DNA of 64,000 nt from positions 165,189 through 229,188 of IMG/VR virus record IMGVR_UViG_3300042691_055965. The stretch is one strand, 5' to 3'. This document shows positions 48,604-63,532 of the stretch, piece by piece. Positions within the stretch are counted from its first letter, which is position 1, and every line of letters starts with the position of its first letter. The notes under the pieces are model-generated. The model worked only from the letters and a program-made list of their open reading frames with translations. It did no database searches and was not told where the DNA came from. Position numbers and translations under genes: made by a program.

Positions 48604-48795
48604 ATGGGTTTTAATAAAAGATTTTTGAATAAAAAAAGTATAATCAATAATGTTCATGATATTTTAAGTTACCTTAATGTAGATGCTTTTTACATTAACG
48701 ATGACTTTTCCTATGATGTTTATCGATTGTACATTGAAGGTAAATCAGAAGAAGAAATACTAAAATACATTAATGAAAATAAAGATGAAGATTAA
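48604..48795 (+). CDS. hypothetical protein
   Basis: 63 aa after TTGACT-17-TATTTT. Confidence 0.55.
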   Translation: MGFNKRFLNKKSIINNVHDILSYLNVDAFYINDDFSYDVYRLYIEGKSEEEILKYINENKDED

Positions 48796-50002
48796 ACTTG
48801 AATACGTGTGGCTTGACGGGTACACACCAGAACCAAACCTTAGAAGTAAAGTTAAAATAGTTAATCATGGCGATGTTAAAGACGCTATGATTACAGGTAA
48901 ATTTCCTATGTGGAATTTTGACGGGTCGTCCACCAATCAGGCGCAAACAGATAGTTCAGACTGTTTATTAAAACCAGTTCGACATTATATGATTGATACT
49001 TTGTCGACGGTATATGTTTTTTGTGAAGTTTTAAATGCAGATGGTACGCCACATCAATCAAATACACGTTCCAAATTAATTGGTGAAGAAAAAAATATTT
49101 GGTTTGGTTTTGAACAAGAATATTTTATTTTCGATAGAAAGAACAAATGTATTTTGGGGCATGACGAAAATAACTTGGAACCGCAAGGTAAATATTACTG
49201 TGGTGTTGGTGAATATGTTGCTGGTAGAAGTTTTGTAAATGAACACCTACATATGTGTTTGAATTATGGAATCGACATCACAGGAATAAATGCAGAAGTT
49301 GCACTTGGACAATGGGAATATCAAGTGTTTTCAAAAGGAAAATTAAAGGCGGGTGATGACTTATGGATGACTAGATATTTCTTACATAAAATTGCAGAAA
49401 AATACGATTACAAAATTGAGTTACATCCAAAACCTTTACAAAAAGGTGAATGGAATGGTTCAGGACTTCACACCAATTTTTCGACAGAAAAAATGAGGGA
49501 AAAAGGTGGTGAAGAATATTTCAAATCATTATTTTCAAGTTTAGAAACACGACATTGGAAACATATAGAAGATTATGGTTCTTCGAATGATTTAAGACTT
49601 ACTGGAAAATTTGAAACACAATCAATAAACAAATTCAGTTGGGGTATTTCAGATAGGGGTGCATCAATTAGGGTTCCACAAACAACAGCAAATGAATGGA
49701 AGGGATATTTGGAAGACAGACGACCTGCATCAAACGCCGACCCATATAAAATCATATATCAATTATGTGAATCAATCAAAAATGCTGAAGCAATTAATGA
49801 TATAAAACACAAAATGAATTTCAAAGGAAACTTTGATGAAATTATCAATAGATACAACGGTGTGCTTCAAACCGAAGAGTTATTGGAAGAATATCAAAAT
49901 GATGATAATTTTGAAGTGGAAAAAGAAACTATGGTAGAAAATAGAAATAATATATCAACAACAGAAATAGAATTTAATTTAAATGGAAATGACACTAAAT
50001 GA
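48773..50002 (+). CDS. glnII: glutamine synthetase, type II-like (auxiliary metabolic gene)
   Basis: LEYVWLDG, WNFDGSST, GFEQEY, GINAEV..GQWEYQ, HPKP..WNGSGLHTNFS, RLTG..ET, RGASIRVP, YLEDRRP.SN.DPY. Confidence 0.92.
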   Translation: MKIKMKIKLEYVWLDGYTPEPNLRSKVKIVNHGDVKDAMITGKFPMWNFDGSSTNQAQTDSSDCLLKPVRHYMIDTLSTVYVFCEVLNADGTPHQSNTRSKLIGEEKNIWFGFEQEYFIFDRKNKCILGHDENNLEPQGKYYCGVGEYVAGRSFVNEHLHMCLNYGIDITGINAEVALGQWEYQVFSKGKLKAGDDLWMTRYFLHKIAEKYDYKIELHPKPLQKGEWNGSGLHTNFSTEKMREKGGEEYFKSLFSSLETRHWKHIEDYGSSNDLRLTGKFETQSINKFSWGISDRGASIRVPQTTANEWKGYLEDRRPASNADPYKIIYQLCESIKNAEAINDIKHKMNFKGNFDEIINRYNGVLQTEELLEEYQNDDNFEVEKETMVENRNNISTTEIEFNLNGNDTK

Positions 50003-50168
50003 GTTAAGACAAGAAAAGGAGTATGGTTATAAAAATCCATCAATTAGAAGTAACCAATCAGTAGATGATAAACACATCATTAATTTGGTAAAAAAATATC
50101 CTAATGATGCCGATCTAGGTAGGGAAGTAAGAAAATATTTAATCAACTTAGGGTTATATGGAAAATGA
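49983..50168 (+). CDS. hypothetical protein
   Basis: KKYPNDADLGREVRK. Confidence 0.55.
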   Translation: MEMTLNELRQEKEYGYKNPSIRSNQSVDDKHIINLVKKYPNDADLGREVRKYLINLGLYGK

Positions 50169-50382
50169 ACAAGTAAACCACCCAAATCATTATGGTGGTG
50201 AAACAAACATTTACGAAGCAATCAAAGTAATTGATGCTTGGGACTTAGGGTTTTCACTTGGTAACACGGTTAAATATATTTCAAGAGCAGGCAAAAAGAA
50301 TAAAGATAAAGAATTGGAAGATTTAAAAAAGGCACTTTGGTATTTAAATCACCACATTGAAACATTAGAAAAAAATGATTGA
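50158..50382 (+). CDS. DUF3310 (T7 gp1.7 nucleotide kinase-like) protein
   Basis: VNHPNHY, GN.VKY..RAGKK, EDLKKA.WYL. Confidence 0.85.
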   Translation: MENEQVNHPNHYGGETNIYEAIKVIDAWDLGFSLGNTVKYISRAGKKNKDKELEDLKKALWYLNHHIETLEKND

Positions 50383-51223
50383 AACAGGAAAAATTATAAA
50401 TGGTGATTGTATTGAAGTAATGAAAACATTACCTGAATGTTCTGTCGATTTGATTGTTACATCACCACCCTATGGTGTTGGAATTGATTACGACGTTCAT
50501 GAAGATGATGTACCATTTGATGAATATTTGGTGTTTGCCAAAAATTGGTTAACTGAAGCGTATAATCTATTAAAAGATGACGGTAGAATTGCTTTGAACA
50601 TTCCATACGAAATCAATAGACAGAAGAAAGGGGGAAGAATTTTCTTTGTTTCAGAAATGTGGCAAATAATGAAAGAAATTGGGTTTGGGTTCTTTGGTAT
50701 CGTGGATTTAGAGGAACAATCACCTCATCGAAGTAAGACAACTGCTTGGGGATCTTGGATGAGTCCTAGTTCACCATATATTTATAATCCAAAGGAATGT
50801 GTCATTTTGGCATACAAAAAACACCACATTAAAAAGGTGAAAGGCGAACCGCAGTGGAAAGGGACACCAACTGAAATTCAACAGGAGGATGGAACCATAA
50901 AAACTAAAGTTGTGTATGAAGAAACAGATAAGAAGGAGTTTATGGAGCTTGTTTTTGGTCAGTGGAATTACTTTGCAGATACTAAATCACTCACCAAGGC
51001 AACGTTTTCGATGGACATCCCAACGAAAGCAATCAAAATACTATCCTACAAAAACGATGTGATTTTAGATCCATTTGCCGGTAGTGGTACAACATTAGTG
51101 GCGGCTGAAGTGTTAGGTAGACGATGGTTAGGTATTGAATTATCACCAAATTATAGTGAAATTGCAAAAACAAGGGTTGAATATTTCAAAACATTACAAA
51201 CAATACAAGAACTCCCACTTTAA
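50375..51223 (+). CDS. beta-class N4-C/N6-A DNA methyltransferase
   Basis: TSPPY, LDPFAGSGTT. Confidence 0.9.
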   Translation: MIETGKIINGDCIEVMKTLPECSVDLIVTSPPYGVGIDYDVHEDDVPFDEYLVFAKNWLTEAYNLLKDDGRIALNIPYEINRQKKGGRIFFVSEMWQIMKEIGFGFFGIVDLEEQSPHRSKTTAWGSWMSPSSPYIYNPKECVILAYKKHHIKKVKGEPQWKGTPTEIQQEDGTIKTKVVYEETDKKEFMELVFGQWNYFADTKSLTKATFSMDIPTKAIKILSYKNDVILDPFAGSGTTLVAAEVLGRRWLGIELSPNYSEIAKTRVEYFKTLQTIQELPL

Positions 51224-51237
51224 AAGTGGGTTTTTTT
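51214..51237 (+). terminator. intrinsic terminator
   Basis: cccactt-taa-aagtggg + T run. Confidence 0.7.
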
Positions 51238-51260
51238 ATTTTTGTAACTATTTATAAGTT

Positions 51261-53507
51261 ATGAAAATTATAATCACAGAATCGCAATACAGACAAATAA
51301 TTAAAGAATCAGGTATCAGGGATATTAAAAAAATCGCAGAAAGATACCCTAAAGCAAAAATTTACTTCCATCAAGACTTAGATGGTGTAACTACCGCAAT
51401 TGCAATGAAAAACTATCTTGAACAAAACGGCATCAAAGTAGTTGATGCTGAAGTGATTCAATATGGTGATAAAGAGTTTTCAGTTAAAAAACTTGACGCA
51501 GAAGGTGATGTGATGCCAGTGTTAGTTGACTTTGCACACGGCAAACCAATGTTTGTCATTCATACCGATCACCACGATACACAAGCTGGTGTTGAATCAG
51601 GAACTGCAACAAGTTTCAAGGCATCTAGATCGAATGTTGAAACAATATCCCAAACGATATCACCAAAAGATATTTTTCCATCTGATGACTTACTTCTTAT
51701 ATCTACTGTCGATTCTGCCAATTTCCTTGCACATGATATAACTTTTGACATGGTAATGAATTATATTTTCAAAATGGATAAGGATCAATCACTTCAAAGA
51801 AATAAAATGATGATGGGATTGGTGACAAACAAATTGTTACTTGCATTTAAAAACAAACCAAAATTTTTAGAAACATTGGTTATGAAAAGTAACCCATCTT
51901 TGTTAAGTATTTTAAATAATATTAGAGATATAATGAAGGTGGAAGGTTATGCTGAACCTGAAGAACTAGAACAAAACAAACAGAATTATATTGAAAAAAT
52001 GAAAGAATTCCCTAAAGTACAGGGTAAAGTTATTGTACAGTATGGTGGGGGTTCTATGACAAAACCAGGTTCATATGATAGATATACGCCGTTTAAGAAT
52101 AATCCTGATGCTGACTTCTTGGTAATTGCTTGGCCGACAGGAATTGTTCAAGCTTCTTGTAATGCATATAAAGGTGAACGTTCACTTAAAGGTGTTAATC
52201 TTGGTGAAATGAAAGATGAGGTTCTTAAAAAGTTTGAACCGGAATTAAGTAAATTAAAAATAAGTTTTGGTACATTAAAAAGAGTTTCTGAATCAAAGGC
52301 TGGTGAGGGTTCCGTTGGTTTTACTCTCAAAGATTTTTTAGCGATATATGGAAATGCACCATCATTGAAGATTGAAGGAAATAAAGAAGATACATTAAGT
52401 GAAATAAATAAACTTTCAGATAAGTTATATTCCACTTTAACTTTCGAAGAAAAAATGAATTTGGAAAAAGCCAGTGTTAATGGTATGGATGTCGTGAAAG
52501 CAAATTCAGGTGGACATAAATGTATTACAAACATTTCTGGTTTAAGTTATCTTTACACAAACATTAGAAGGTATAAAGATGACGAATTAAAGATGATACA
52601 AAAATATGGTGGATCAAACAATTTTGTTTTGGACATCCAAAGAAAGTTGAAGTCGATGAAAAAAAATCAAGAACTTACTGAAAAGCAAAAAACTGCAGCA
52701 GTAAACCAAATCAAAAAAGAAATAGAATCAGGAAGGTATAACCCAGACATAGACAATAAGGTAACATCATATGTAGATATGATTAAGAAAATTCAACAAG
52801 AGTTTGTAAAAGTACTTGAAAGTTATATAGAAAAAGAATCCATCAACGAAAATGTCGTTGAAAAAAAAAAGTACTATATAGACGATAGTGACATTAAAGG
52901 TGCGGGAAAAGGGGTATTTGCAAAAACAAATATCAAAAAAGGTGAACGTATCGGATTGCTTCACACAATAAAAAAAATGGGTGTCAATTATGATTTTACT
53001 GAATTGGGTAAAATGCATAATCATAGTGGTAAACCCACTTGTCATAATGAAAAAGTTGGAAATAAAAGATACTTAGTCGCATCCAAAGATTTAAAAAAAG
53101 GTGAAGAACTGACAACCAATTACAGATTACAACCAGATTTGGAACAACCAAAAGAAGGTTGGGGTAATTTGAAAGAAGAAAAAGAATTTAAACCACACAT
53201 AGATGGTTACCGTACATATTCACCATTCAAAGATTTGCCATACATAATAGTCAAAGGGAATGGTATTGACTGTGATAATATTGTTCATGACTTGGTTTTA
53301 GTAGGTGACAATAAAAAGGTTAAATACTGTAAAAAAAACACTGGAGTTTATAAAATTACAGGAGCAAGTAAAATTGTAGAATTACCTGTTGATAAAACTG
53401 AAGATGTTGAAGAAATATTTAAAAGTCCTGAAAATGTGGAACTGTGGGTTAAAGAAAAAATTAAATCAGTGGATAAAAAAGGGGAAATTAGAAGAATGAT
53501 GAATTAA
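51261..53507 (+). CDS. leader + DHH-family phosphoesterase + SET domain + unknown C-terminal domain
   Basis: HQDLDG, VD, DHH, GGH; then S.IKGAGKGVFA..IKKGE, NHS, A.KDLKKGEELT.NY. Confidence 0.8.
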   Translation: MKIIITESQYRQIIKESGIRDIKKIAERYPKAKIYFHQDLDGVTTAIAMKNYLEQNGIKVVDAEVIQYGDKEFSVKKLDAEGDVMPVLVDFAHGKPMFVIHTDHHDTQAGVESGTATSFKASRSNVETISQTISPKDIFPSDDLLLISTVDSANFLAHDITFDMVMNYIFKMDKDQSLQRNKMMMGLVTNKLLLAFKNKPKFLETLVMKSNPSLLSILNNIRDIMKVEGYAEPEELEQNKQNYIEKMKEFPKVQGKVIVQYGGGSMTKPGSYDRYTPFKNNPDADFLVIAWPTGIVQASCNAYKGERSLKGVNLGEMKDEVLKKFEPELSKLKISFGTLKRVSESKAGEGSVGFTLKDFLAIYGNAPSLKIEGNKEDTLSEINKLSDKLYSTLTFEEKMNLEKASVNGMDVVKANSGGHKCITNISGLSYLYTNIRRYKDDELKMIQKYGGSNNFVLDIQRKLKSMKKNQELTEKQKTAAVNQIKKEIESGRYNPDIDNKVTSYVDMIKKIQQEFVKVLESYIEKESINENVVEKKKYYIDDSDIKGAGKGVFAKTNIKKGERIGLLHTIKKMGVNYDFTELGKMHNHSGKPTCHNEKVGNKRYLVASKDLKKGEELTTNYRLQPDLEQPKEGWGNLKEEKEFKPHIDGYRTYSPFKDLPYIIVKGNGIDCDNIVHDLVLVGDNKKVKYCKKNTGVYKITGASKIVELPVDKTEDVEEIFKSPENVELWVKEKIKSVDKKGEIRRMMN

Positions 53508-53511
53508 TCGT

Positions 53512-53540
53512 TTGACTAATTATCATTTTTGATTTATAAT
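53512..53540 (+). promoter_or_regulatory. canonical sigma-70 promoter
   Basis: TTGACT-17-TATAAT. Confidence 0.65.
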
Positions 53541-53575
53541 TACAAAAGAATTTAATCACATTAAAAAGTATTTAT

Positions 53576-53722
53576 ATGACAGAAACAACAAAAGAAGTTG
53601 AAAACGTTATTTACTCTTATGTAAATGACAGAAACGAAAAAGTATACACACCTAACTTGGAATTTGCCCACATTATGGCAAAAAAGTATGGTACTGATGA
53701 TGTCTTCGTCGAAAAAAATTAA
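53576..53722 (+). CDS. small hypothetical protein (48 aa, not in ORF track)
   Basis: MTETTKEVENVIYSYVNDRNEKVYTPNLEFAHIMAKKYGTDDVFVEKN. Confidence 0.5.
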   Translation: MTETTKEVENVIYSYVNDRNEKVYTPNLEFAHIMAKKYGTDDVFVEKN

Positions 53723-53734
53723 AAAAATTTTACA

Positions 53735-53877
53735 AGGTACTTGTCAAATCAAAATAAAAGACTTAACTTTGTAAAAGATTTGAAACTAAAGGTGATGAAA
53801 GATACTCGTTGTCGAATCGAAAAAAAAAGTTCACAAAGTACTTGACAAATAGAAATAAAAGTCGTAACTTTGTAAAA
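53735..53877 (+). promoter_or_regulatory. tandem promoters P1/P2, 101 bp apart
   Basis: TTGTCA-17-TAACTTTG (53741/53764) and TTGACA-17-TAACTTTG (53842/53865); near-identical 42-bp repeats. Confidence 0.8.
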
Positions 53878-53881
53878 CAAA

Positions 53882-53912
53882 TTCGGAAACGTCCGAAATC
53901 GTTCTTTGAAAA
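53882..53912 (+). promoter_or_regulatory. boxB-like hairpin + boxA-like antitermination element
   Basis: ttcgga-aacg-tccgaa followed by GTTCTTTGAAAA, resembling rrn leader boxA. Confidence 0.6.
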
Positions 53913-53914
53913 TT

Positions 53915-54770
53915 GAATTATCCGTTCAGGAGTAAGTAATGAAACTGATAAAGATATTCGGCGGTGTATAGTCGTTAAATAAACCACGAAAGTGGGATAA
54001 AGTGAATCAGAAGTGTAACTGATTTGCGGTTTGGGTAACCGAACTTGAGTACACAAGCGGGATACCGTATAACCTTTAGTACCGAGGGCAACGCTGTAGG
54101 GAAAGTGGTTAGACGATTGGGCGATGTGGGTCGTTCGATTGAGGTGGGAACATCAATAGGAAGAACCCGTAGGAATATTGCAAAAAATAAGATTATCCAA
54201 TTTTATTATTGCGTTTTCCAATATGATAGGATACTTAAAACCGAAAGGTATGATAACAAACAGGTGGTGCTGACATTATCCTTGATAAACTCCTACCAAG
54301 GGGTTAATCACGAAGTAGTCTTGAAATATGGAAATGGGGACATTTCACGGAGTAGTTGAGTATCGATTCGTTCAAAAGATGGGTTGGCTCGGGTGGCGGA
54401 CCACTACTTCGAAAATCCACGACACAATACTTATGATTTAAAAAGTTGAATCAAATTAACTAAGAAAGCTATAAGGAAAAGTGTCCGTCAGGTTTGGATG
54501 AAAGGTGACTACATAGTAATGAGCTGTTCATTGCACACAGAGATCCCAAGTCAATGTGTAATTATCCGAAAAACCTTTAGTCCCGCAAGGACGAACTGGG
54601 GAGGCATCCTCGGAAAGAGTCAAGTAAGATGAGAGTAATTCAAACCTCAAGGAGTGGTTTACCTAAATAACCGTCATTGAGTTTTACTTTCCAAAAGAAA
54701 GTGGATACGAAGGGAAACAATAATACTTCTAAAGAAACTCACAAAAAACTGTAATCTCAGGTTTTTATTT
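53915..54770 (+). ncRNA. large structured ncRNA (about 850 nt; GOLLD/ROOL-class candidate)
   Basis: No credible ORF, GC above background, GNRA-capped and GU-rich stems, own promoters and terminator; ends approximate. Confidence 0.7.
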
Positions 54771-54800
54771 TAGGTTAAAAATCTTATAAGGAATTTATTG

Positions 54801-54834
54801 GGGAAACAACAAATAGTTGCTTCCCTTTTTTTTT
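54801..54834 (+). terminator. intrinsic terminator of the ncRNA unit
   Basis: gggaaacaac-aaata-gttgcttccc + T9. Confidence 0.75.
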
Positions 54835-54867
54835 ACCATAGAGGTATAAATTTTGAAAAAAATTATT

Positions 54868-55161
54868 ATGGAAATGTTATATTTTTCATTCGGGTTTCTT
54901 ACCGTAATTGCTTTGATATTCATCTGTGTTTTCATCGTGGGAATTATCAAAATCTTTAGACTTAAAAAGGAAGTTGATAATCAAAAAGAAACTTTAAGAC
55001 ATGAATTTGAATGGTTTAGTCGTTCATTACACGAAAAAGAACGTGATTGGAGGGAATCGTTGGATAGTGTTCACCGAAATATAGATAGGATAACACAAGA
55101 AACAATCAATTATATTGATAAAAAAATCGAAAAAACAAATAAACAAAAAAAAGAAAAATGA
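54868..55161 (+). CDS. N-terminal TM + coiled-coil protein
   Basis: Hydrophobic N-terminus. Confidence 0.6.
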   Translation: MEMLYFSFGFLTVIALIFICVFIVGIIKIFRLKKEVDNQKETLRHEFEWFSRSLHEKERDWRESLDSVHRNIDRITQETINYIDKKIEKTNKQKKEK

Positions 55162-55165
55162 TATT

Positions 55166-55192
55166 AATCCCATCATCTGATGGGATTTTTTT
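55166..55192 (+). terminator. intrinsic terminator
   Basis: aatcccatca / tgatgggatt + T run. Confidence 0.7.
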
Positions 55193-55253
55193 GTAGATTG
55201 ATATATTTATAATTAAATAACAAATAAATAAACAAAAAAATTGAAAAAAAGTT

Positions 55254-55733
55254 ATGAAAAGAATTGTTAGATTAACAGAATCAGATCTTGCAAGAATAGT
55301 CAAAAGAGTTATTAATGAAGGTAGCGAAAAAGCGGTATTGGATGCGGGTTGGAACAGGGACGCAACAAAAATGGCAGTTGCATTCGGTACTCCCACGGCA
55401 TCTGATGGGGGTGTATCATCTGGAATCCAAGGTGTAAAAGTAGTGTTTGATGGGCTTATTTATAATGCATCCAATAAAGTAACATATGAAGGAAAAATGG
55501 CGTTCTATGGTCGTTGTGACAAAAATGGTAACCCTGGTGCTATGTCAGGTGTTGATTTGAATGATGTACTGAGTGGAGGTTCATATTATCTTTTCGGTTA
55601 TGGTGGAAAAGTTGACACCGTTGCTAGAAATTGGTGTAAAACAAAGACAGGTGTTAAACCAACAGGTTATGTAGATTCCGATTTTGTTAGTATGGCAAAA
55701 GAAGATATGGCTAAAGGACTTAAAAGATCTTAA
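55254..55733 (+). CDS. leader-bearing protein (candidate capsid cargo)
   Basis: MKRIVRLTESDLARIVKRVINE. Confidence 0.7.
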   Translation: MKRIVRLTESDLARIVKRVINEGSEKAVLDAGWNRDATKMAVAFGTPTASDGGVSSGIQGVKVVFDGLIYNASNKVTYEGKMAFYGRCDKNGNPGAMSGVDLNDVLSGGSYYLFGYGGKVDTVARNWCKTKTGVKPTGYVDSDFVSMAKEDMAKGLKRS

Positions 55734-55749
55734 AAACAAAACAAAATGA

Positions 55750-55777
55750 AAAAAATCCCCTACTTGGGGATTTTTTT
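55750..55777. terminator. bidirectional terminator
   Basis: aaaaaatcccc-tactt-ggggatttttt between convergent genes. Confidence 0.75.
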
Positions 55778-55780
55778 ATT

Positions 55781-56206
55781 TTAAAAGAATGCTACTTTAG
55801 TAGTATTACCACTTTTATATTTAAAAACCAAATCACTCTTGAATTTAGTGTTAAGACTGATTAAACAAGTGACGTTTCCAAAATCCTCAGTATTGATGTC
55901 AAATTTAACATAATCATCTGTTGTAACTAAATTATTTATTACTGAAACTTTTTTAATTCCTTCATTTTCACCGACATATCTGTGAACGAAAGTTTTATTA
56001 TCCAAATCAATTTCGTAATGATTAAATCCTTCAGTCCAAACGGTATTTTGGGAATTTGGACCATTCTGTAATAAAGTTGATAAACTAGTTTTGGAATTGG
56101 AATAGTCCATTTTGTAAAAACCAAACCCAACAAAATTGAATTGTGTTTGACAAAAAGAAATAAAAGACACGAACAAAAAAGAAAGATTCAAAAAAATAGT
56201 TTTCAT
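55781..56206 (-). CDS. secreted protein with Bacteroidota-type signal peptide
   Basis: MKTIFLNLSFLFVSFISFC-Q; minus-strand TATCTTTG at 56244-56251. Confidence 0.65.
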   Translation of the reverse strand: MKTIFLNLSFLFVSFISFCQTQFNFVGFGFYKMDYSNSKTSLSTLLQNGPNSQNTVWTEGFNHYEIDLDNKTFVHRYVGENEGIKKVSVINNLVTTDDYVKFDINTEDFGNVTCLISLNTKFKSDLVFKYKSGNTTKVAFF

Positions 56207-56332
56207 GTTTTCAGTTTTAAATGATTAATAAAATATTACAATACAAAGATATATTAATTTTTCACATAAACAAAAAAAAATTAATTTTTTATTTCATTTT
56301 GCCAAATCAAATATTTTTTCTAAATTTGTTTT

Positions 56333-56722
56333 ATGGAACACGTAAAGAAATTTGGTAAATCAATTGCAGATAAACAGGTAAAGTTTGCTAAAAAATATTT
56401 CAAAAAAACTACCTTACTTTTTGATAAAAAAATCCCATATTACAATGAATTGAATAATAGTGTTTTGAAAATCAAAAACATTAGAAAGTATAGGCACAGT
56501 TGGGGTGCTGAATATGGTTATGTTTATGAAATTGACTTGATTGTTGATTTAAGTAACAATGAATATAGCTATTCATTTACTAATGAAAAGGCGAACAGAA
56601 GAAAAAGAAGATACAATTCTTGGTATAGAGATAAGTTTCAAGACAGACTTATGGAAGAATTGAAATATTTCGAAATAACAAATATAGTAGTATCAAAAAT
56701 AGAGTACAAAAAAATTGATTAA
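56333..56722 (+). CDS. hypothetical basic protein
   Basis: TAAATTTG promoter at 56321. Confidence 0.6.
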   Translation: MEHVKKFGKSIADKQVKFAKKYFKKTTLLFDKKIPYYNELNNSVLKIKNIRKYRHSWGAEYGYVYEIDLIVDLSNNEYSYSFTNEKANRRKRRYNSWYRDKFQDRLMEELKYFEITNIVVSKIEYKKID

Positions 56723-56749
56723 TTGAAAAAAGTTTTATAATTTTACAAC

Positions 56750-57016
56750 ATGGCACAAGTAAAACAAGTAACAGTAATACATCCTAAGTTTGGGGAAATA
56801 TTGAATGAATCTTTTTTGGATGAAGTTCAGTTCAAAATCTTTCTTACAATGTTACATAGTTCATTGGAAATGAATCAGAAGTTGACATCATTCAATGGTA
56901 AAGACTTTTTGATTCATATACCAAACGACATATTAAAAGAATGTTTAATTATCGGAAACACAAAGGAGGTCTCTATGGCTGAAGTAGTATCGGCAAAATC
57001 TAAAATAGAGTCCTAA
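56750..57016 (+). CDS. hypothetical protein
   Basis: 88-aa ORF. Confidence 0.6.
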   Translation: MAQVKQVTVIHPKFGEILNESFLDEVQFKIFLTMLHSSLEMNQKLTSFNGKDFLIHIPNDILKECLIIGNTKEVSMAEVVSAKSKIES

Positions 57017-57080
57017 CAGTTTCTTTGTTTATCTTCAAAACAAAGTGGTGGAAGTTAGATTCACATTCCGTGAACGACCC

Positions 57081-57113
57081 AAAAAAGGTGAGTGTAGTTG
57101 CTCACCTTTTTTT
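57081..57113 (+). terminator. intrinsic terminator
   Basis: aaaaaaggtgag-tgtagttg-ctcacctttttt. Confidence 0.8.
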
Positions 57114-57134
57114 GTTTTAAAGGTATTTATGTAT

Positions 57135-57689
57135 ATGAAAACATTAATATCCGAAAATATGAATTACCATTTGGATAATGGTATTCCACTAACTGAAAAC
57201 GTATTCAGACCTTTTTCGCCTGAATTTTTTAACTTGATTAATGAGGCAAGAACATTATATAATAAAGGTTTAATTGATGTTGACAATGAAGAAAAGTGGA
57301 TTGTGGAATCTGACTTTGGAAAAAAAATAAGATTGTCAAATGGTAAAGTTGTAAGACTTGAAGTACCCATTTTGGAAAATAGTATTAACGAAGCAGAATA
57401 CAAAGGAAGAAAAGTTCAACTTGGTAGACCGATGCGAAACACTGGTGGAGGAAAAAAATATGTGGTTTATGTTATGAACCCATCAACAAGAAAAGTTAAG
57501 AAAATAAGTTTTGGTGATGTTCACGGTGGATTAACTGCGAAAGTTTCTAACCCCAAAGCAAGAAAGGCATTTGCTTCAAGACACAACTGTAAAGCAAAAA
57601 AAGATAGAATGACTGCTGGTTATTGGGCGTGTAGAATAAATAGGTATGGACATCTTTGGGGTGGTAAAACATACGGTGGATATTGGTGA
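57135..57689 (+). CDS. two-domain protein with basic C-terminal domain (KKISFGD..ARKAFASRHNC..AGYWAC)
   Basis: Start re-assigned downstream of the terminator and TATTTATG; internal SINE-A junction. Confidence 0.65.
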   Translation: MKTLISENMNYHLDNGIPLTENVFRPFSPEFFNLINEARTLYNKGLIDVDNEEKWIVESDFGKKIRLSNGKVVRLEVPILENSINEAEYKGRKVQLGRPMRNTGGGKKYVVYVMNPSTRKVKKISFGDVHGGLTAKVSNPKARKAFASRHNCKAKKDRMTAGYWACRINRYGHLWGGKTYGGYW

Positions 57690-58249
57690 TGAAAATTATA
57701 CTTACAGAAAAACAATTGAAAGAAATGAAAGAAGATCTTCATTCTGAAAAAAAAATAAAACTTGTCAATAAGTTTTATCAGCAAGGGTTTTCATATCAAG
57801 AAATTTCAAATTATACATCTTTACCGTTGGGGGAAGTTGTGACTCTTTTAAAGGATTACGATATGGAAATCGATTGTAAAATGGCGTATGATTTAATCAC
57901 CACCCTTTATGATAAAACAGATTTATTTCGCAAAGTAGTTCGTACAGAAAATTACACACTTGAGTTTTTTTTCAGTAAAATGGAAGGAGCAATTGAATAT
58001 AGTTACGAAACTGAAAAATATGGATTATACGGTTATGGAACACCGTATTGGAATCAAGAATGTTACCTCCCTATCGAAAATGTTGAAATTACTGATAATG
58101 TCAACGGTGAGACTGAAGACTATGAACCATATTCTAAAATAGATTTACCAAATAGATTTGATACCTTATCTGAATTACTTGATTGGTTTAATAACGATTA
58201 TTTTAAAATAATGAAAAAAACCCTTGAACAGTTTTCAAAAGATTATTAA
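57689..58249 (+). CDS. leader-bearing protein
   Basis: MKIILTEKQLKEMKE. Confidence 0.65.
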   Translation: MKIILTEKQLKEMKEDLHSEKKIKLVNKFYQQGFSYQEISNYTSLPLGEVVTLLKDYDMEIDCKMAYDLITTLYDKTDLFRKVVRTENYTLEFFFSKMEGAIEYSYETEKYGLYGYGTPYWNQECYLPIENVEITDNVNGETEDYEPYSKIDLPNRFDTLSELLDWFNNDYFKIMKKTLEQFSKDY

Positions 58250-58251
58250 CA

Positions 58252-58527
58252 ATGAAAAAACATTTACCCTTCAAACAAAAAAATATTGACGAAAAAAAAA
58301 TTAGAACGTTCGATGAAAATATCGATCCGATTGAATTGAAATGGCACAGGGATAAAGAAGATAGAAAAGTTAAAATAATTGAGTCAACAAATTGGAAATT
58401 CCAAATGGATAATGAATTACCAAAATTATTGAAAAAAGGTGATACATTAGTCATTCCAAAAGAAACATTCCATCGTGTAATCAAAGGTGATGGTAATTTG
58501 GTAATTGAGGTTGAATTTATTGATTGA
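58252..58527 (+). CDS. cupin-like protein
   Basis: WHRD..E, GD.LVIPK..FHRVIKG. Confidence 0.6.
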   Translation: MKKHLPFKQKNIDEKKIRTFDENIDPIELKWHRDKEDRKVKIIESTNWKFQMDNELPKLLKKGDTLVIPKETFHRVIKGDGNLVIEVEFID

Positions 58528-58545
58528 ATTGATATTTATAATATT

Positions 58546-59013
58546 ATGCATAGAAGTTTTATAATTAGTGAAGAAGAAAAGAAAAGAATTTTGATTCAAC
58601 ATCAAAACGCAACTAGTTCGTTATATTTGAATTTGAAAGAAGGAACAGAAACGATTTCTTTAGATGATATGCAAAAGTTCCTTAATGATACAAAAGAAGA
58701 AATACTTCAAACATTTGATTCATTGGATTCAAATAATTTGCAAACAGAAAAACTTAATTTGAAAAAAAAGATAGAATCAATTTTGAATCAAATAAAATTT
58801 GTTAATGGTGCAAAAATCGATCAACAAAAATTAAACAATATTGTAAAAGATACTGAAAGGTTAAAATTGCTTTTAGATAAATTGGATTTAAAAAACATAA
58901 AACAAATCAAAACGGAATTTCAAACCTCATTTTCATCATTATATGCATTAATTGCTGATGAAATTAAAAAGGCAAACCTCAAAGGAAAAATGATAACACA
59001 ACAAACATCATAA
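58546..59013 (+). CDS. leader-bearing helical protein
   Basis: FIISEEEKKRILIQH..YLNLKE. Confidence 0.65.
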   Translation: MHRSFIISEEEKKRILIQHQNATSSLYLNLKEGTETISLDDMQKFLNDTKEEILQTFDSLDSNNLQTEKLNLKKKIESILNQIKFVNGAKIDQQKLNNIVKDTERLKLLLDKLDLKNIKQIKTEFQTSFSSLYALIADEIKKANLKGKMITQQTS

Positions 59014-59015
59014 AA

Positions 59016-59315
59016 ATGGGAAAAATTATTATAACAGAAAAACAATTAGAAAATGTCATAAGAACAATCAAGGAAGAACATAAAGAAGGTTCATACATGG
59101 CAAAGCAACAACTTTTCACAATAGCAACACTTGCTTACAAAATGTGGGAAATGTTGGAAGATGAAGAAACTTTGGAAGATTGGATGGAAACAAAAATTGC
59201 ACAATCAGAACAATCCATTTCATCAGTTGTTAAGTCCTTTATGTATGATGAAGCAGAAGAAAGGATGAAAGGAAACAACCAAATAGATTTAGACGATTTG
59301 GTAATTGGAAAATAA
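59016..59315 (+). CDS. leader-bearing protein
   Basis: MGKIIITEKQLENVIRTIKEE; MAKQQL..LEDWMETKI. Confidence 0.65.
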   Translation: MGKIIITEKQLENVIRTIKEEHKEGSYMAKQQLFTIATLAYKMWEMLEDEETLEDWMETKIAQSEQSISSVVKSFMYDEAEERMKGNNQIDLDDLVIGK

Positions 59316-59319
59316 TTTG

Positions 59320-59346
59320 AACCCTCTTGATTGACAAGGGGGTTTT
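59320..59346 (+). terminator. intrinsic terminator overlapping a TTGACA promoter
   Basis: aaccctcttg-attga-caagggggtt + T run. Confidence 0.6.
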
Positions 59347-59364
59347 TATTTTTATATTTATTTT

Positions 59365-59544
59365 ATGTACGTAATAATCAAACACCTCAGATCGGCATCA
59401 GGAAATAAAAAAGTTCCTGTTATTTTATTAAACACAGAAAGTGAAATTTGGGAATTCAATTCTTTTGAAGAAGCAGAAAAAATGAAAGACATATTCCAAA
59501 CCAATTCAGATTCTGGATATACTTACGAAGTAAAAAAAATATAA
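59365..59544 (+). CDS. small hypothetical protein (59 aa, not in ORF track)
   Basis: MYVIIKH...EIWEFNSFEEAEKMKDIFQ. Confidence 0.55.
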   Translation: MYVIIKHLRSASGNKKVPVILLNTESEIWEFNSFEEAEKMKDIFQTNSDSGYTYEVKKI

Positions 59545-59665
59545 TTATGGAAGATTTATTTGAAATGATGCATAATGAATTCATTAATTCAGAATTATTT
59601 GAACAATTTATGTTCGAACAATCACAACATCAGTGTTAATCGAAAAGTGATATATTTATAAGGAT

Positions 59666-60604
59666 ATGTCATTATCAGATAATAAAATTATATCTTTAGG
59701 TAAAGTATTATTAAATATTGCTAAAGAAGAGTACGGACAAGATTTAATTACTCTACGTAAATTCTATACGTTATGTCAATCTGTTGAAATGGCACAAACC
59801 ATCTTGTCTTCAACTAATTTGATGTCAGACAAAGTAAAAACAATATATTCAGCATTTTTCATACAATCTAATAAAACAAAAGAGGAAATTACAAAATTAA
59901 TTAATGATTTATATTTTGTAACAATTGATTTTTACGATGACACAGGTTATATAGAAAATGAATGTTCAAGTTGCTATGGTGATGGATACCAAGACTGTTC
60001 TAATTGCGAAGGTACAGGAAAAGAATATTGTAGAACTTGTGATGGGGATGGTGGAATAGATTGTGATAGTTGCGGTGGTGGTGGTACAGAAGATTGTAGA
60101 CATTGTGACGGTAAAGGTACAGAAACAGAAGAAGACGAAGAAGGTGATGAAATAGAAGTTGAATGTGTTATTTGTGATGGTTCAGGTGTAGAAAAGTGCA
60201 GAGATTGTTCGGGGAGTGGAAATTTTGAGTGCCCAAATTGTGAAGGGAGTGGAAATGAAGAATGTGGTAGTTGTGATGGGGGTGGAAATGAAATGTGTGA
60301 CGAATGTGACGGTACAGGTGAAACAAAAAGTGAAGAAGAATTTTATAATATTACAAAACGACAATATGTTACAGTTGGAAACCTGATTGAAAAATATGAT
60401 GGTGAAATTATGTTATATGAAATATTTGAAGAAAAAGATTCAAATTTTGAAATGTTGGTAGATGAATTAAATTTATTTTCTTCGATTTATTACGACGATA
60501 TACCTGCAGATGAAAGAAATAATTCAGCTGATGTTGAAGATTATTTTGTTGAAATAGTTGATGTATTAAAATTGGAAAGAGTTAACAAGAGATTAGCTTT
60601 TTAA
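59666..60604 (+). CDS. protein with ten DnaJ-type CxxCxGxG zinc-finger repeats
   Basis: 5+5 repeats around an acidic loop; no J domain. Confidence 0.8.
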   Translation: MSLSDNKIISLGKVLLNIAKEEYGQDLITLRKFYTLCQSVEMAQTILSSTNLMSDKVKTIYSAFFIQSNKTKEEITKLINDLYFVTIDFYDDTGYIENECSSCYGDGYQDCSNCEGTGKEYCRTCDGDGGIDCDSCGGGGTEDCRHCDGKGTETEEDEEGDEIEVECVICDGSGVEKCRDCSGSGNFECPNCEGSGNEECGSCDGGGNEMCDECDGTGETKSEEEFYNITKRQYVTVGNLIEKYDGEIMLYEIFEEKDSNFEMLVDELNLFSSIYYDDIPADERNNSADVEDYFVEIVDVLKLERVNKRLAF

Positions 60605-60634
60605 TAAACCCACAATATTTATAAATAAAAATAT

Positions 60635-61243
60635 ATGAAATCGAGATTAACTGAATCAGACATAAGAAGAATAGTCAATAAAACTTTGTTTGAGATGAAC
60701 CACGATGACGATGACTTTGAAATGAATCATTCGATGGGAAGAGATGAAGAGTGGGGTGAAACCGACAAAGGAGAACAAAAACTTCAAGATTTGTTAGATG
60801 AAGCAAGAGATATATTGGAAAATGAATGTGGATTTACATTTGAAGAATTAAATCAAATGGATGAAATGGATGTTGCAACTGCATTGGAAGAAAATGCTGA
60901 AAAGTGTGAAGAAACGGAAACACAATACATTTATATGTTAGTTGATCAGATTATTGATTTGTTATATGAAGAAGGTTTCGAAGGTGACTTGGAAGAAGGT
61001 TTTGATGACGAAAGAACAAAAAGACACTACGACGATTATTCACCAAAGACATATAGAAGAATGCCAAAAAACATATTTCAACCAGGTGCTGAAGACCCTG
61101 AAGGAACAATGTTAATGAAAAGAGACGACGATGAAGAATATAACGCACATTTTGAAGACGATTTCAATTTTGATGATTTTCTTGACAAAGATGATGAAGA
61201 CAAAGAAGATTGGGATTACGATGATGAAGAATTTGAATATTAA
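60635..61243 (+). CDS. leader-bearing, very acidic protein
   Basis: MKSRLTESDIRRIVNKTLFE; D/E-rich. Confidence 0.7.
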   Translation: MKSRLTESDIRRIVNKTLFEMNHDDDDFEMNHSMGRDEEWGETDKGEQKLQDLLDEARDILENECGFTFEELNQMDEMDVATALEENAEKCEETETQYIYMLVDQIIDLLYEEGFEGDLEEGFDDERTKRHYDDYSPKTYRRMPKNIFQPGAEDPEGTMLMKRDDDEEYNAHFEDDFNFDDFLDKDDEDKEDWDYDDEEFEY

Positions 61244-61245
61244 TA

Positions 61246-61271
61246 AAAAAAGTCGGTTATACCGACTTTTT
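61246..61271. terminator. bidirectional terminator
   Basis: aaaaagtcggt-tat-accgacttttt between convergent genes. Confidence 0.75.
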
Positions 61272-61853
61272 CATTAATAAGTTGTTTAGTTTATAATATC
61301 CAATAAATACCAAACCACCAATAATACCGTAAAAGTGTCCTACTGCGGTAAAGTTTAATTCAGGAGAAGGTTTTAATGAGATTAATGTGTCAAAAATAAA
61401 GACAACAGAAAGGAATTTTAATTTATTATCATTAGAAAAGAAAAGAAAAACTGTCACTATTGTTGCAACAAAACCTGAACTACCCACCAAAGAATCATCA
61501 CCTTGTAAAACAAATAGAACGTTTATTAATATGACGTTAACGACAATACTTATTACCAACATTATCAGGTAGTTAGTTTTACTAATCATATTTTCAAGTT
61601 GAGATGAAAATATTATAAAGAAAGAAAGATTCCACAACAAATGGGTTGGTTCTTGAGCATGAAATAATGGGTAAGTTAAAACTTGATGAAGTTGAAATTT
61701 TGGAGAATCAAATGAATGTAAAGCAAGTGAATTCATCAACACCTGACTTATTGGTATTATAACAAAAATGGACAACAAGTAACAATAAACTAAAATTTTT
61801 GAAATTTTTGTAGTAATGTTATCTGACTTTCTGATAAAAATTATGTTTTTCAT
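61257..61853 (-). CDS. rhomboid-family intramembrane serine protease
   Basis: TY..FH....HL..N, GSSG catalytic Ser, H..G...G catalytic His; about six TMs. Confidence 0.8.
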   Translation of the reverse strand: MKNIIFIRKSDNITTKISKILVYCYLLSIFVIIPISQVLMNSLALHSFDSPKFQLHQVLTYPLFHAQEPTHLLWNLSFFIIFSSQLENMISKTNYLIMLVISIVVNVILINVLFVLQGDDSLVGSSGFVATIVTVFLFFSNDNKLKFLSVVFIFDTLISLKPSPELNFTAVGHFYGIIGGLVFIGYYKLNNLLMKKSV

Positions 61854-61945
61854 TTTTCTAATTTTTTTGGTTTGAAATACAAATATAGTGTTTTTTTTTA
61901 ATCAAGATATATTTATATAAAAAATAAAAAAAGAAAAAAAATATT

Positions 61946-62392
61946 ATGAAAAGAAAAAAAATAATTAGATTGTCGGAGTCACAATTGACAAAATTTATTA
62001 GACGTGTTGTGAATGAAGCTGCAGTATCAACTCAAGATGCTGCGGAAATTAAAAAAGGAACCGCAGCTGGAAATGCTTGGGTAGATTGTTCGATTGCTGC
62101 AAAAATATATAATTCACAAGGATATATTTATGATGATTTATTTATGTTACGCGACGCTCTTGCAGAGATTAAAGATAAAGCTCAATATTACCGAGTGGAA
62201 GAATGTTTGGAAAGTATAAGTGATGGTGACTATGATGATATCATCGATTACATTAATAACTTTGCTGCGGGATTGGAATTAGGTAGGGCTAATATACCTT
62301 ATCATATTCAACGATTACTAGGTAATTCAGAAATGGAAAGATTGAATACCGAAAAAACTTTTGGTGATTATTTCTATAAAGCGGGTGCGTAA
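61946..62392 (+). CDS. leader-bearing protein
   Basis: MKRKKIIRLSESQLTKFIRRVVNEA. Confidence 0.7.
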   Translation: MKRKKIIRLSESQLTKFIRRVVNEAAVSTQDAAEIKKGTAAGNAWVDCSIAAKIYNSQGYIYDDLFMLRDALAEIKDKAQYYRVEECLESISDGDYDDIIDYINNFAAGLELGRANIPYHIQRLLGNSEMERLNTEKTFGDYFYKAGA

Positions 62393-62431
62393 TAGTCCTC
62401 ACTAAATAGAAATTAATTATAATTTATTATT

Positions 62432-62460
62432 AAGACTCCCTTTTTGGAGTCTTTTTTTTT
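62432..62460 (+). terminator. intrinsic terminator
   Basis: aagactcc-cttttt-ggagtctt + T run. Confidence 0.75.
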
Positions 62461-62491
62461 GATGTCAAATTATTTTTTGTATCTTTGTGAT

Positions 62492-62989
62492 ATGAAAAAC
62501 AGACTACCATACGAAATGACATCAAAGGCAATCAAGGGATATTCTAATTCTGCAATTGCCAAAGGAGAAACAAAAGATTGTGTTGTCAGGGCATTTGCTT
62601 CTTCATTCGAAATTCCTTATGATGTTGCTCACGAATATGTTGCGACACACTTCAATCGTAAACCACGATGTGGGACTTTTGGAACATCTCTTAAGTTGGT
62701 TAAAATGGCAAATGAGGAAGTTGTTGTAAACCAAAAAAAAGTTTATTTAGTTGGATACCGATTTACCCCATCAATGTTTGGAACATTGTCATATGATGTT
62801 AAAGTCAAAGGTGAGGTTAAAAAACGAAATATGACGGTTGGAACATTTATTAAGAAAAATCCAATTGGGACATTTTTTGTTATAGTTTCAGGACACGCAT
62901 TCACAATCAAAGATGGTGTTGTTATCGGAAACTATGAAGATTCAGTTAAAATAAAAAGAGTAATGAAATGTGCATTTGAAATTAAATGA
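62492..62989 (+). CDS. hypothetical protein with DCVVRA..GH motif (possible Cys-His peptidase fold)
   Basis: Start placed after TATCTTTG at 62480. Confidence 0.55.
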   Translation: MKNRLPYEMTSKAIKGYSNSAIAKGETKDCVVRAFASSFEIPYDVAHEYVATHFNRKPRCGTFGTSLKLVKMANEEVVVNQKKVYLVGYRFTPSMFGTLSYDVKVKGEVKKRNMTVGTFIKKNPIGTFFVIVSGHAFTIKDGVVIGNYEDSVKIKRVMKCAFEIK

Positions 62990-63162
62990 TATTTCAAAAT
63001 ATGTATTGTAAAACAATCATATGAAAAATATACTACCTTGGTTCTTGTTATTGATATTATTTTTTAATACATTTTTCAGTATATACATCGATAATATTGT
63101 TGCAACACTTGGATGGACGGTTGCAAGCTTATTACAAATTAAAAATTGCATAATAAAAGAAA

Positions 63163-63447
63163 ATGAAAACATTTGACGATATAGAATTCAAAGAACATTC
63201 AGCCGGTGATGGGTATCATGGAAAAATATTCTTTGATAATGGATATGGTGTGTCAGTTGTTAGATTCAAAATCAATGGACGATACGGATCTTACACTAAT
63301 ACTGACAATCAATGGGAACTTGCGGTTCTTTTTGGTAATGAAAATGAGTGGGAAATAACTTATAATACACCCATCACAAATGATGTTATCGGTTATTTAT
63401 CTTCTGATGAGGTAACTGAAATTATGAAAAAAGTTCAAGAACTTTGA
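63163..63447 (+). CDS. hypothetical protein
   Basis: FDNGYGVSVV..WELAVL..TPITNDVIGYL. Confidence 0.65.
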   Translation: MKTFDDIEFKEHSAGDGYHGKIFFDNGYGVSVVRFKINGRYGSYTNTDNQWELAVLFGNENEWEITYNTPITNDVIGYLSSDEVTEIMKKVQEL

Positions 63448-63477
63448 AAAAACACTTCACGGGGTGTTTTTTTTTTT
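63447..63477 (+). terminator. intrinsic terminator
   Basis: aaaaaacacttc / gggtgttttttt. Confidence 0.65.
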
Positions 63478-63532
63478 GTTCAAAGGTATATTTACTTATA
63501 TAAGTAGCATAATCTGATTTAATTAAAAAAAA

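What the first reader, a model, noticed from the sequence alone, without database searches (positions are those of the whole stretch)
53735..54834. About 850-nt structured ncRNA expressed like an rRNA operon (tandem promoters, boxB/boxA, terminator)
Seen: the only kilobase-scale gap in an otherwise packed genome, and GC-richer than the background. It is preceded by two near-identical promoters 101 bp apart that each satisfy both TTGACA-17-TAnnnT and the Bacteroidota TAnnTTTG, then a hairpin and GTTCTTTGAAAA. It ends at a strong terminator. Inside are GNRA-capped stems (ccac-GAAA-gtgg 53984, ggtttgg-GTAA-ccgaact 54028, acc-GAAA-ggt 54240, a GCAA loop near 54585) and GU-rich helices, which imply pairing at the RNA level. 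Known: rrn leaders use P1/P2 plus boxA for Nus antitermination; phages carry giant ornate RNAs of unknown function such as GOLLD and ROOL. Inference: a highly expressed giant RNA, either GOLLD-like or a new class, that borrows host rRNA antitermination.
Basis: partly seen in the sequence, partly recalled or inferred. Interest (0 to 1): 0.9.

Follow-up and report, generated by a model that had tools for sequence, protein, structure and literature searches.

The report
Phage GOLLD RNA with rRNA-style leader
The gap holds a GOLLD RNA, a known giant phage RNA that builds RNA-only cages, and in this group of Bacteroidota phages it is preceded by the same promoter, hairpin and boxA signal that the hosts use for ribosomal RNA.

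Summary
Window 53735-54834 is a non-coding, GC-richer gene with tandem promoters, a leader hairpin, GTTCTTTGAAAA and an intrinsic terminator.

The RNA is not a new class. Rfam GOLLD (RF02032) matches 54348-54763 end to end at 313.7 bits (gathering score 150). The 430 nt upstream form a GOLLD 5' domain. It is shared with more than 100 viral contigs and backed by heavy covariation: 140 of 186 predicted pairs show compensatory changes.

The part I found in no paper is the leader. GTTCTTT[G/A]A sits in front of the RNA in 63 of 65 distinct homologous leaders. It is also there in 49 of 49 loci collected through a 3'-domain motif alone. It stays invariant and unpaired. It usually follows a Bacteroidota-type promoter (TTG...TAnnTTTG, often in tandem) and a covarying hairpin.

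A sample of 100 Bacteroidota 16S leaders shows the same layout and the same boxA (GTTCTTTGAAA is the commonest form). In related phages the motif also precedes tRNA and tmRNA genes.

Best reading: these phages transcribe GOLLD as an rRNA-like stable RNA, using host Nus-factor antitermination. No experiment supports this yet, and the function of GOLLD remains unknown.

The parts
53741..53771 (+). Promoter P1, Bacteroidota type (TTGTCA ... TAACTTTG).
   Evidence: Matches TTG-N20-TAnnTTTG. It is one copy of a 56-nt direct repeat that is 86% identical to the P2 copy.
53777..53819 (+). P1 leader hairpin (GAUUUGA ... UCGAAUC) with a conserved loop, followed by an A-run that leads into P2.
   Evidence: Folds at -6.2 kcal/mol. 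The same element, with a covarying stem, sits directly before the boxA in L074, L092, L238, L244 and L253.
53842..53872 (+). Promoter P2 (TTGACA-17-TAACTT, with the -7 box TAACTTTG). The predicted transcription start is near 53878.
   Evidence: In relatives the -7 box ends 24-29 nt before the boxA in most leaders.
53882..53897 (+). Leader hairpin (UUCGGA-AACG-UCCGAA) in the position that boxB holds in rrn leaders.
   Evidence: About 25 of 47 distinct leaders have a hairpin here, and the stems covary: UCGGA/UCCGA, UCAGA/UCUGA, GUCAC/GUGAC, GUUACUC/GAGUAAC.
53901..53912 (+). boxA-like element GTTCTTTGAAAA.
   Evidence: - It is the only exact copy in the window.
- It is conserved in 63 of 65 distinct leaders and in 49 of 49 loci of an independent sample.
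- It is unpaired in the consensus fold.
- It equals the commonest boxA form in Bacteroidota 16S leaders.
- It matches 10 of 11 positions of GYTCTTTAANA (PMC5725501).
53915..54347 (+). GOLLD 5' domain. It opens with the stem GAAUUAUC/GAUAUUC (53915-53922 with 53953-53959) and includes the hairpins CCAC-GAAA-GUGG, GGGUAAC and ACC-GAAA-GGU.
   Evidence: It aligns with LR745206, LR756502 and more than 100 IMG/VR contigs. RNAalifold finds compensatory changes throughout.
54348..54763 (+). GOLLD conserved 3' domain, including the variable A-rich linker at about 54420-54480.
   Evidence: Rfam RF02032 matches model positions 1-416 at 313.7 bits, E = 6e-89.
54800..54834 (+). Intrinsic terminator: stem 54800-54810 with 54816-54825, then nine U.
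   Evidence: RNAfold gives -13.4 kcal/mol. Relatives carry either a comparable terminator or a tRNA at this position.

Best explanation
This is a GOLLD RNA gene of a large phage that infects a member of the Bacteroidota.

Shown here:
- The roughly 850-nt structured core (53915-54763) belongs to the GOLLD family.
- Upstream lie two tandem Bacteroidota-type promoters, then a short leader of hairpin plus GTTCTTTGAAAA.
- An intrinsic terminator follows the RNA.
- This leader design is conserved across the clade and copies the design of host 16S rRNA leaders.

Inferred:
- The leader motif is a working boxA. On the nascent RNA it would bind host NusB and S10 (NusE). Together with NusA, NusG and SuhB these would turn RNA polymerase into the rRNA-type antitermination complex.
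- That would shield a long untranslated transcript from Rho-dependent termination. It might also help the RNA fold while it is being made.
- The product would then assemble like the solved GOLLD RNAs, which form RNA-only cages of 10 to 14 copies.

What the cage does for the phage is not known.
For: Identity as GOLLD:
- The Rfam match is end to end and far above threshold.
- The same model hits the homologous loci.
- 140 of 186 predicted pairs carry compensatory changes in 37 sequences that are mostly about 57-60% identical.
- No reading frame is conserved.

The leader:
- GTTCTT[T/A]NA is present in 63 of 65 distinct leaders.
- G[CT]TCTTT[AG]A lies 740-865 nt upstream of a 3'-domain motif in 49 of 49 independently collected loci, with none on the opposite strand.
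- The motif density is 7.06 per kb in leaders against 0.074 per kb elsewhere.
- The motif stays when GOLLD follows a tRNA instead of a promoter (L001, L030, L231).
- It also precedes tRNA or tmRNA genes: 23 of 91 other distinct contexts, in 1.6% of the sequence.

Match to the host:
- 47 of 100 Bacteroidota 16S leaders carry GTTCTTT[GA]A or GCTCTTT[GA]A, and most of the rest carry GTTCATTGA or GATCTTTGA.
- 58 of the 62 16S leaders with a TAnnTTTG box close upstream have a hairpin between that promoter box and the boxA.
- A Bacteroidota host is indicated by the TAnnTTTG promoters and by SprB repeats in two window proteins.

Published background:
- boxA consensus and Nus function: PMC5725501.
- GOLLD cages: PMC12286853 and PMC12990946.
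Against: - There are no transcript, 5'-end, binding or termination data.
- The motif is short and AT-rich. With two mismatches it is not enriched in the window.
- The homologues are related, so conservation counts are not independent events.
- boxA is not a general GOLLD feature. The Acinetobacter phage GOLLD sits directly after a tRNA, and no such motif occurs in 5 kb around it. LR756502 (L002) and L098 also lack it.
- The phage encodes its own sigma-70-family protein, so host sigma use at P1 and P2 is assumed.
- The L. brevis prophage GOLLD is reported as dispensable for phage production (PMC7567579).
Confidence: 0.62

Rival explanations
1. The conserved GTTCTTTGAA is part of the mature GOLLD RNA. 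It would act as a structural or ligand-binding element of the cage. It could pair with the conserved AAAGA just before the core or with the CAAAAGA loops. It could also be a site that the assembled cage displays to bind S10, NusB or ribosomes. On this reading it is not a transcription signal.
For: - It always lies within about 10-80 nt of the first GOLLD stem.
- It is kept even where a tRNA, not a promoter, lies upstream.
- Ribosome binding by GOLLD in pull-downs is mentioned in the preprint version of the Kretsch et al. cryo-EM paper (10.1101/2024.12.08.627333).
- In L051 and L231 the motif could form a small hairpin with the following AAAGA.
Against: - RNAalifold leaves it unpaired.
- The candidate partner varies (AAAGA, AAACG, AAATG, AGTGG) with no matching change in the motif.
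- The same motif precedes tRNA genes, tmRNA genes and another small RNA in related phages.
- It is the boxA of host rrn leaders.
Confidence: 0.15
2. The motif is a DNA-level or processing signal unrelated to Nus factors. It could be an operator for a phage or host regulator, part of an extended promoter or discriminator region, or an RNase cleavage site that frees GOLLD from precursor transcripts.
For: - The distance from the -7 box is tightly fixed: the box ends 24-29 nt before the motif in most leaders.
- Stable-RNA precursors need processing, and GOLLD often lies within tRNA arrays.
Against: - The motif also occurs without a nearby promoter (L001, L030, L231).
- It occurs at very different distances from promoters in 16S leaders (10-120 nt).
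- It matches the experimentally defined boxA consensus at 10 of 11 positions.
- It is strand-specific.
Confidence: 0.13
3. The resemblance to an rRNA leader is only shared ancestry and base composition. The leader would have been inherited with the gene and have no function of its own.
For: - The sequences are AT-rich.
- All loci are homologous, so the counts overstate independence.
- The motif is only 9-12 nt long.
Against: - The flanks on both sides of the motif, the hairpin sequences and the promoters diverge freely while the motif does not.
- The overall identity of the RNAs is only about 57-60%.
- The motif is roughly 96 times denser here than elsewhere in the same loci.
- It recurs at unrelated tRNA genes.
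Confidence: 0.1

Closest known systems
GOLLD RNA (Rfam RF02032; Weinberg et al. 2009; cryo-EM structures in PMC12286853 and reviewed in PMC12990946)
   Same: - The conserved 3' domain matches in full.
- There is a 5' domain of about 430 nt and an A-rich linker.
- The total size is about 850 nt.
- It is phage-encoded.
- Relatives lie next to tRNA and tmRNA genes.
   Different: - This copy has no tRNA anywhere in 64 kb. It is a free-standing unit with its own tandem promoters and terminator.
- The host phylum is Bacteroidota, not Lactobacillales or Actinomycetota.
- I found no paper that mentions the boxA-type leader for GOLLD.
Bacterial rrn leader antitermination module (P1/P2 promoters, boxB-boxA-boxC, NusB/NusE/NusA/NusG/SuhB complex)
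   Same: - Tandem promoters.
- A hairpin followed by boxA, in the rrn order.
- The boxA sequence is identical to the commonest Bacteroidota 16S leader form.
- It stands in front of a long untranslated structured RNA.
   Different: - It drives a phage RNA, not rRNA.
- No boxC equivalent was defined.
- Nus binding has not been shown.
- The phage also carries a sigma-factor gene of its own.
Lambda nut sites (boxA-boxB with N protein)
   Same: A phage uses boxA and host Nus factors to make RNA polymerase resistant to termination.
   Different: - In nut the order is boxA then boxB, and boxB binds the phage N protein.
- Here the order is hairpin then boxA, as in rrn.
- No N-like protein was found.
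- The target is a non-coding RNA rather than downstream genes.
ROOL RNA and the roughly 800-nt ICP1 non-coding transcript
   Same: These are large phage non-coding RNAs of unknown function. ROOL also forms cages. The ICP1 RNA is, like this one, not next to tRNAs and is very abundant (PMC7567579).
   Different: They are unrelated in sequence and structure. Rfam reports no ROOL match here.

Membership tests
GOLLD RNA (RF02032) | The covariance model of the conserved 3' domain scores above the gathering threshold. | tested here: met
   313.7 bits against 150, model positions 1-416 of 416, E = 6e-89.
GOLLD RNA (RF02032) | A large, less conserved 5' domain precedes the 3' domain, giving a total length of about 800 nt or more. 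| tested here: met
   53915-54347 aligns with homologues and shows compensatory pairs. The core is about 850 nt.
GOLLD RNA (RF02032) | The secondary structure is supported by covariation and no reading frame is conserved. | tested here: met
   140 of 186 pairs have double changes. The ORF frames are broken in homologues.
GOLLD RNA (RF02032) | It lies in a phage or prophage, often beside tRNA genes. | tested here: met
   The window carries phage-type genes, and 67 of 109 related loci carry tRNA or tmRNA genes. This copy itself has no tRNA within 64 kb.
GOLLD RNA (RF02032) | It assembles into an RNA-only multimeric cage. | not testable with these tools
   Known only from cryo-EM of other members.
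rrn-type boxA / Nus antitermination leader | The boxA sequence matches the consensus. | tested here: met
   GTTCTTTGAAA against GYTCTTTAANA is 10 of 11. It is identical to the commonest form in 100 Bacteroidota 16S leaders.
rrn-type boxA / Nus antitermination leader | It lies in the transcribed leader, downstream of the promoter and upstream of the structured RNA. | tested here: met
   By prediction only. The -7 box ends 28 nt before the motif, and the first GOLLD stem starts 3 nt after it.
rrn-type boxA / Nus antitermination leader | A hairpin precedes boxA (boxB position). | tested here: met
   53882-53897 forms the hairpin, and the stems covary in relatives. Bacteroidota rrn leaders have the same layout.
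rrn-type boxA / Nus antitermination leader | A boxC element follows boxA. | tested here: inconclusive
   Both GOLLD and rrn leaders tend to continue with ..ATTGA.. after the motif, but conservation there is weak.
rrn-type boxA / Nus antitermination leader | NusB-NusE bind the RNA and termination is suppressed. | not testable with these tools
   This needs biochemistry or genetics.

The most novel reading that the evidence does not exclude
In a whole clade of Bacteroidota phages, GOLLD and the phages' other stable RNAs (tRNAs, tmRNA, a roughly 200-nt unnamed RNA) would be made as 'honorary rRNA'. A conserved boxA would recruit the host NusB-S10 antitermination and folding complex. That would be the first specific host machinery tied to a giant ornate RNA. 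If the leader stays on the mature RNA, each cage would also display 10-14 boxA tails that could draw NusB and S10 away from host rrn operons.
Probability: 0.5. Interest if true: 0.6.

Novelty: new member of a known kind. Interest (0 to 1): 0.45.

Why it matters
GOLLD is one of the largest bacterial and phage RNAs with no known function. Recent structures showed that it builds protein-free cages, but nothing links it to a cellular pathway.

This leader gives a concrete, testable handle. It is conserved, it matches the host rRNA leader, and it also marks the phages' tRNA genes. That predicts how the RNA is transcribed and protected from Rho. It also points to an experimental system: a Flavobacterium or Bacteroides host, with NusB, S10 and SuhB.

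More broadly, boxA searches have so far left out non-coding RNAs (PMC5725501). The result suggests that phages outside the lambdoid group also use Nus factors.

The RNA itself is an ordinary member of a catalogued family, so the gain is incremental.

Tried and rejected
- A megablast of 24 kb of the window against GenBank phages found nothing. blastn found only two huge uncultured phages and a short piece in Acinetobacter phages.
- ARAGORN found no tRNA or tmRNA in the window.
- Two sub-threshold Rfam hits, SpF39 and rli40, cover only the terminator and are taken as chance.
- A protein-coding reading was rejected because the ORFs are not conserved.
- Pairing of the boxA with the AAAGA before the core was rejected for lack of covariation.
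- boxA as a universal GOLLD feature was rejected. The Acinetobacter phage locus has none.
- The two-mismatch search for the motif in the window was uninformative: 40 found against 32 expected.
- Pfam and PHROGs scans of about 50 ORFs found no NusG, N or Q-like antiterminator and no RNA-processing enzyme next to the RNA.
- The original GOLLD paper (PMC4140389) is not held, so I could not check its consensus drawing for a leader motif.
- The roughly 200-nt RNA upstream of GOLLD in L013, L015 and L043 has no Rfam match.

Full report
**What is there.** The window carries genes typical of a large phage. These include an SbcC-like nuclease, a primase, an amidase, three DNA methylases, DnaJ, a glutamine-synthetase-like protein, a sigma-70-family protein and proteins with SprB repeats. 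Genes are packed almost entirely on the + strand.

Between the 48-aa ORF ending at 53722 and the ORF starting at 54853 lies about 1.1 kb with no conserved reading frame. Other apparent gaps are tiled by small ORFs. GC rises to 0.39-0.42 there, against about 0.30 nearby.

- The 56-nt promoter duplication, with copies 101 nt apart.
- Two matches to TTG-N20-TAnnTTTG.
- The hairpin at 53882-53897.
- The only exact GTTCTTTGAAAA in the window.
- The GNRA-capped stems.
- A terminator with nine U.

**Identity.** Rfam's GOLLD model (RF02032), which covers the conserved 3' domain, matches 54348-54763 end to end at 313.7 bits. The gathering score is 150 and E = 6e-89. No other family reaches threshold.

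The 430 nt before it align with two uncultured phages of about 640 kb, LR745206 and LR756502, whose loci also score as GOLLD. A 29-nt motif from this 5' part recovered 107 IMG/VR loci.

I aligned 37 representatives, each under 93% identical to the others and mostly about 57-60% identical. RNAalifold predicts 186 pairs in this alignment, and 140 of them carry at least one compensatory double change. The window's ORFs are broken in the homologues.

So this is a structured RNA and a regular GOLLD member, not a new class.

Published work describes these properties of GOLLD:
- It is more than 800 nt long and encoded by phages or prophages.
- It often lies near tRNAs.
- It is induced during lytic growth.
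- It is dispensable in one L. brevis prophage.
- It assembles into RNA-only cages of 10-14 copies.
- Its function is unknown.

These points come from PMC12286853, PMC12990946 and PMC7567579.

- Among 65 distinct 200-nt leaders from the first collection, 63 contain GTTCTT[T/A]NA. It lies 37-117 nt before the 5'-domain motif.
- Its density is 7.06 per kb in leaders against 0.074 per kb in the other 2.0 Mb of the same loci.
- In the alignment the motif is nearly invariant while both flanks vary, and the consensus fold leaves it unpaired.
- The only plausible partner, AAAGA before the core, changes to AAACG, AAATG and others without a matching change in the motif.
- A second collection, chosen only by a 3'-domain motif, shared no exact 5' motif with the first. 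It gave 49 distinct loci, and all 49 have G[CT]TCTTT[AG]A 740-865 nt upstream, with none on the opposite strand.
- Most leaders have a TAnnTTTG box ending 24-29 nt before the motif.
- About 25 of 47 distinct leaders have a small hairpin in between, and its stem covaries.
- 38 of 64 distinct upstream regions hold two or three complete promoters spaced about 90-100 nt apart. The tandem arrangement in the window is therefore a family habit.
- The window's P1 leader hairpin is itself a conserved element. In some relatives it directly precedes the boxA.

**Comparison with the host signal.** I fetched 120 Bacteroidota loci through the start of their 16S gene, and 100 of them had enough upstream sequence.

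- 47 of the 100 carry GTTCTTT[GA]A or GCTCTTT[GA]A 60-320 nt before the 16S gene. GTTCTTTGAAA is the commonest form.
- Most of the others carry GTTCATTGA or GATCTTTGA at the same place.
- Of 62 leaders with a TAnnTTTG box within 120 nt, 58 have a hairpin between that box and the boxA.
- Position profiles of the two sets agree over the core and on the A-rich stretch before it. They agree only weakly on an ..ATTG.. after it.
- The experimentally derived consensus for gamma-proteobacteria is GYTCTTTAANA (PMC5725501). The window matches 10 of 11 positions, and some relatives (GTTCTTTAACA) match all 11.

A Bacteroidota host is supported independently by the promoter type and by SprB repeats in two proteins.

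**Beyond GOLLD.** In related phages the same motif stands before tRNA genes, before a tmRNA region and before an unnamed roughly 200-nt RNA. Of 91 distinct non-GOLLD contexts, 23 lie within 150 nt upstream of a tRNA or tmRNA on the same strand. Only 1.6% of the sequence qualifies.

The motif is kept when GOLLD follows a tRNA rather than a promoter (L001, L030, L231). This argues for a signal attached to stable-RNA transcription rather than a piece of the GOLLD fold.

It is not universal, however. The Acinetobacter phage GOLLD starts right after tRNA-Asn, with no such motif in the 5-kb locus. L002 and L098 also lack it.

**Mechanism.** Shown:
- family membership;
- structure supported by covariation;
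- conserved promoter, hairpin and boxA-like leader;
- identity of that leader with host rrn leaders;
- the terminator.

Inferred from established knowledge of rrn antitermination:
- NusB-S10 bind the motif on the nascent RNA and nucleate the NusA/NusG/SuhB complex.
- That complex lets polymerase cross about 900 nt of untranslated RNA without Rho termination, and it may assist folding.

I put this at about 0.6. The rivals are a role in the mature RNA, an unrelated regulatory or processing site, and mere inheritance. They are listed with their tests in the rival explanations.

**Other context.**
- L091 is identical to window 49468-64000.
- L092, L074 and L066 are syntenic at 66-80% identity, with GOLLD as the best-conserved segment.
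- L109 and L034 share only the GOLLD gene with the window, at 88% and 83%.

**Novelty.** The RNA is a new member of a known family. In the searchable library no paper holds both 'GOLLD RNA' and boxA. The four that mention GOLLD and antitermination do not connect them (two are versions of one study; I read two of the four and judged the rest by title). None links GOLLD with Bacteroidetes phages.

The original 2009 description could not be read. The leader may therefore have been noticed before without my seeing it.

I score interest at 0.45. The identification itself is routine, and the conserved rRNA-type leader is a modest but directly testable lead.

Noticed in passing
window 30533-31348, 31355-31385 and 31791-31821: The phage encodes a sigma-70-family protein with regions 1.2, 2 and 4. 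It is followed at once by two near-identical Bacteroidota-type promoters (TTGGCAGA...TATCATATCTTTG). Whether this sigma or the host's reads the GOLLD promoters is open.
   Followed up: partly
window 6563-9268 and 16508-18157: Two large proteins carry SprB repeats, a motif of the gliding-motility adhesins of Flavobacteriia and Cytophagia. One also hits a PHROG virion structural protein. They are probably receptor-binding or fibre proteins, and they give a clue to the host.
   Followed up: partly
L013 about 3040-3250 (- strand); the equivalent regions in L015 and L043: An unannotated RNA-like segment of about 200 nt lies just upstream of GOLLD. It has its own TAnnTTTG promoter, hairpin and GTTCTTTGAAG, and it is conserved among three loci. 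It has no Rfam match at gathering threshold.
   Followed up: partly
L006, L045 and L077, 60-110 nt upstream of their boxA: A conserved leader element (..ACGGAATT.AAATCTCAC.ATCCGTAGTT.ATAGAGTAAG..) lies between the promoter and the boxA. It looks like a small structured motif of unknown kind.
   Followed up: no
window 53777-53819; L074, L092, L238, L244, L253: The P1 leader hairpin has a conserved loop (AGGTGATGAAAGATACTCG) and a covarying stem. In the relatives it replaces the small hairpin directly before the boxA. In the window both kinds occur in tandem.
   Followed up: partly
window 53552-54833 compared with L109 and L034: Two contigs share only the GOLLD gene with the window (88% and 83% identity) and no flanking similarity. 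In the syntenic relatives GOLLD is more conserved than the neighbouring genes. This suggests either exchange of the RNA gene between phages or very strong constraint on it.
   Followed up: partly
window 51261-53507: The 748-aa protein just upstream combines a weak DHH phosphoesterase N-terminal match with a SET-domain match near residues 584-621. This is an unusual pairing for a phage protein.
   Followed up: no
window 28991-29887, 40568-41407, 50375-51223, 48773-50002, 39344-40333 and 61257-61853 (-): The window encodes three DNA methyltransferases, a glutamine-synthetase-like protein, a full DnaJ and a rhomboid-family protease. This gene content fits a jumbo or huge phage.
   Followed up: no
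window 53512-53540 and 53576-53722: A near-consensus E. coli-type promoter match (TTGACT-17-TATAAT, 11 of 12) precedes a 48-aa ORF with internal direct repeats, just before the GOLLD promoters.
   Followed up: no
L269, L283, L316 and L318, about 56 nt upstream of their GTTCTTTGAAA: Some GOLLD leaders carry a second boxA-like motif of the GCTCTTTAAAA type in tandem with the first.
   Followed up: no
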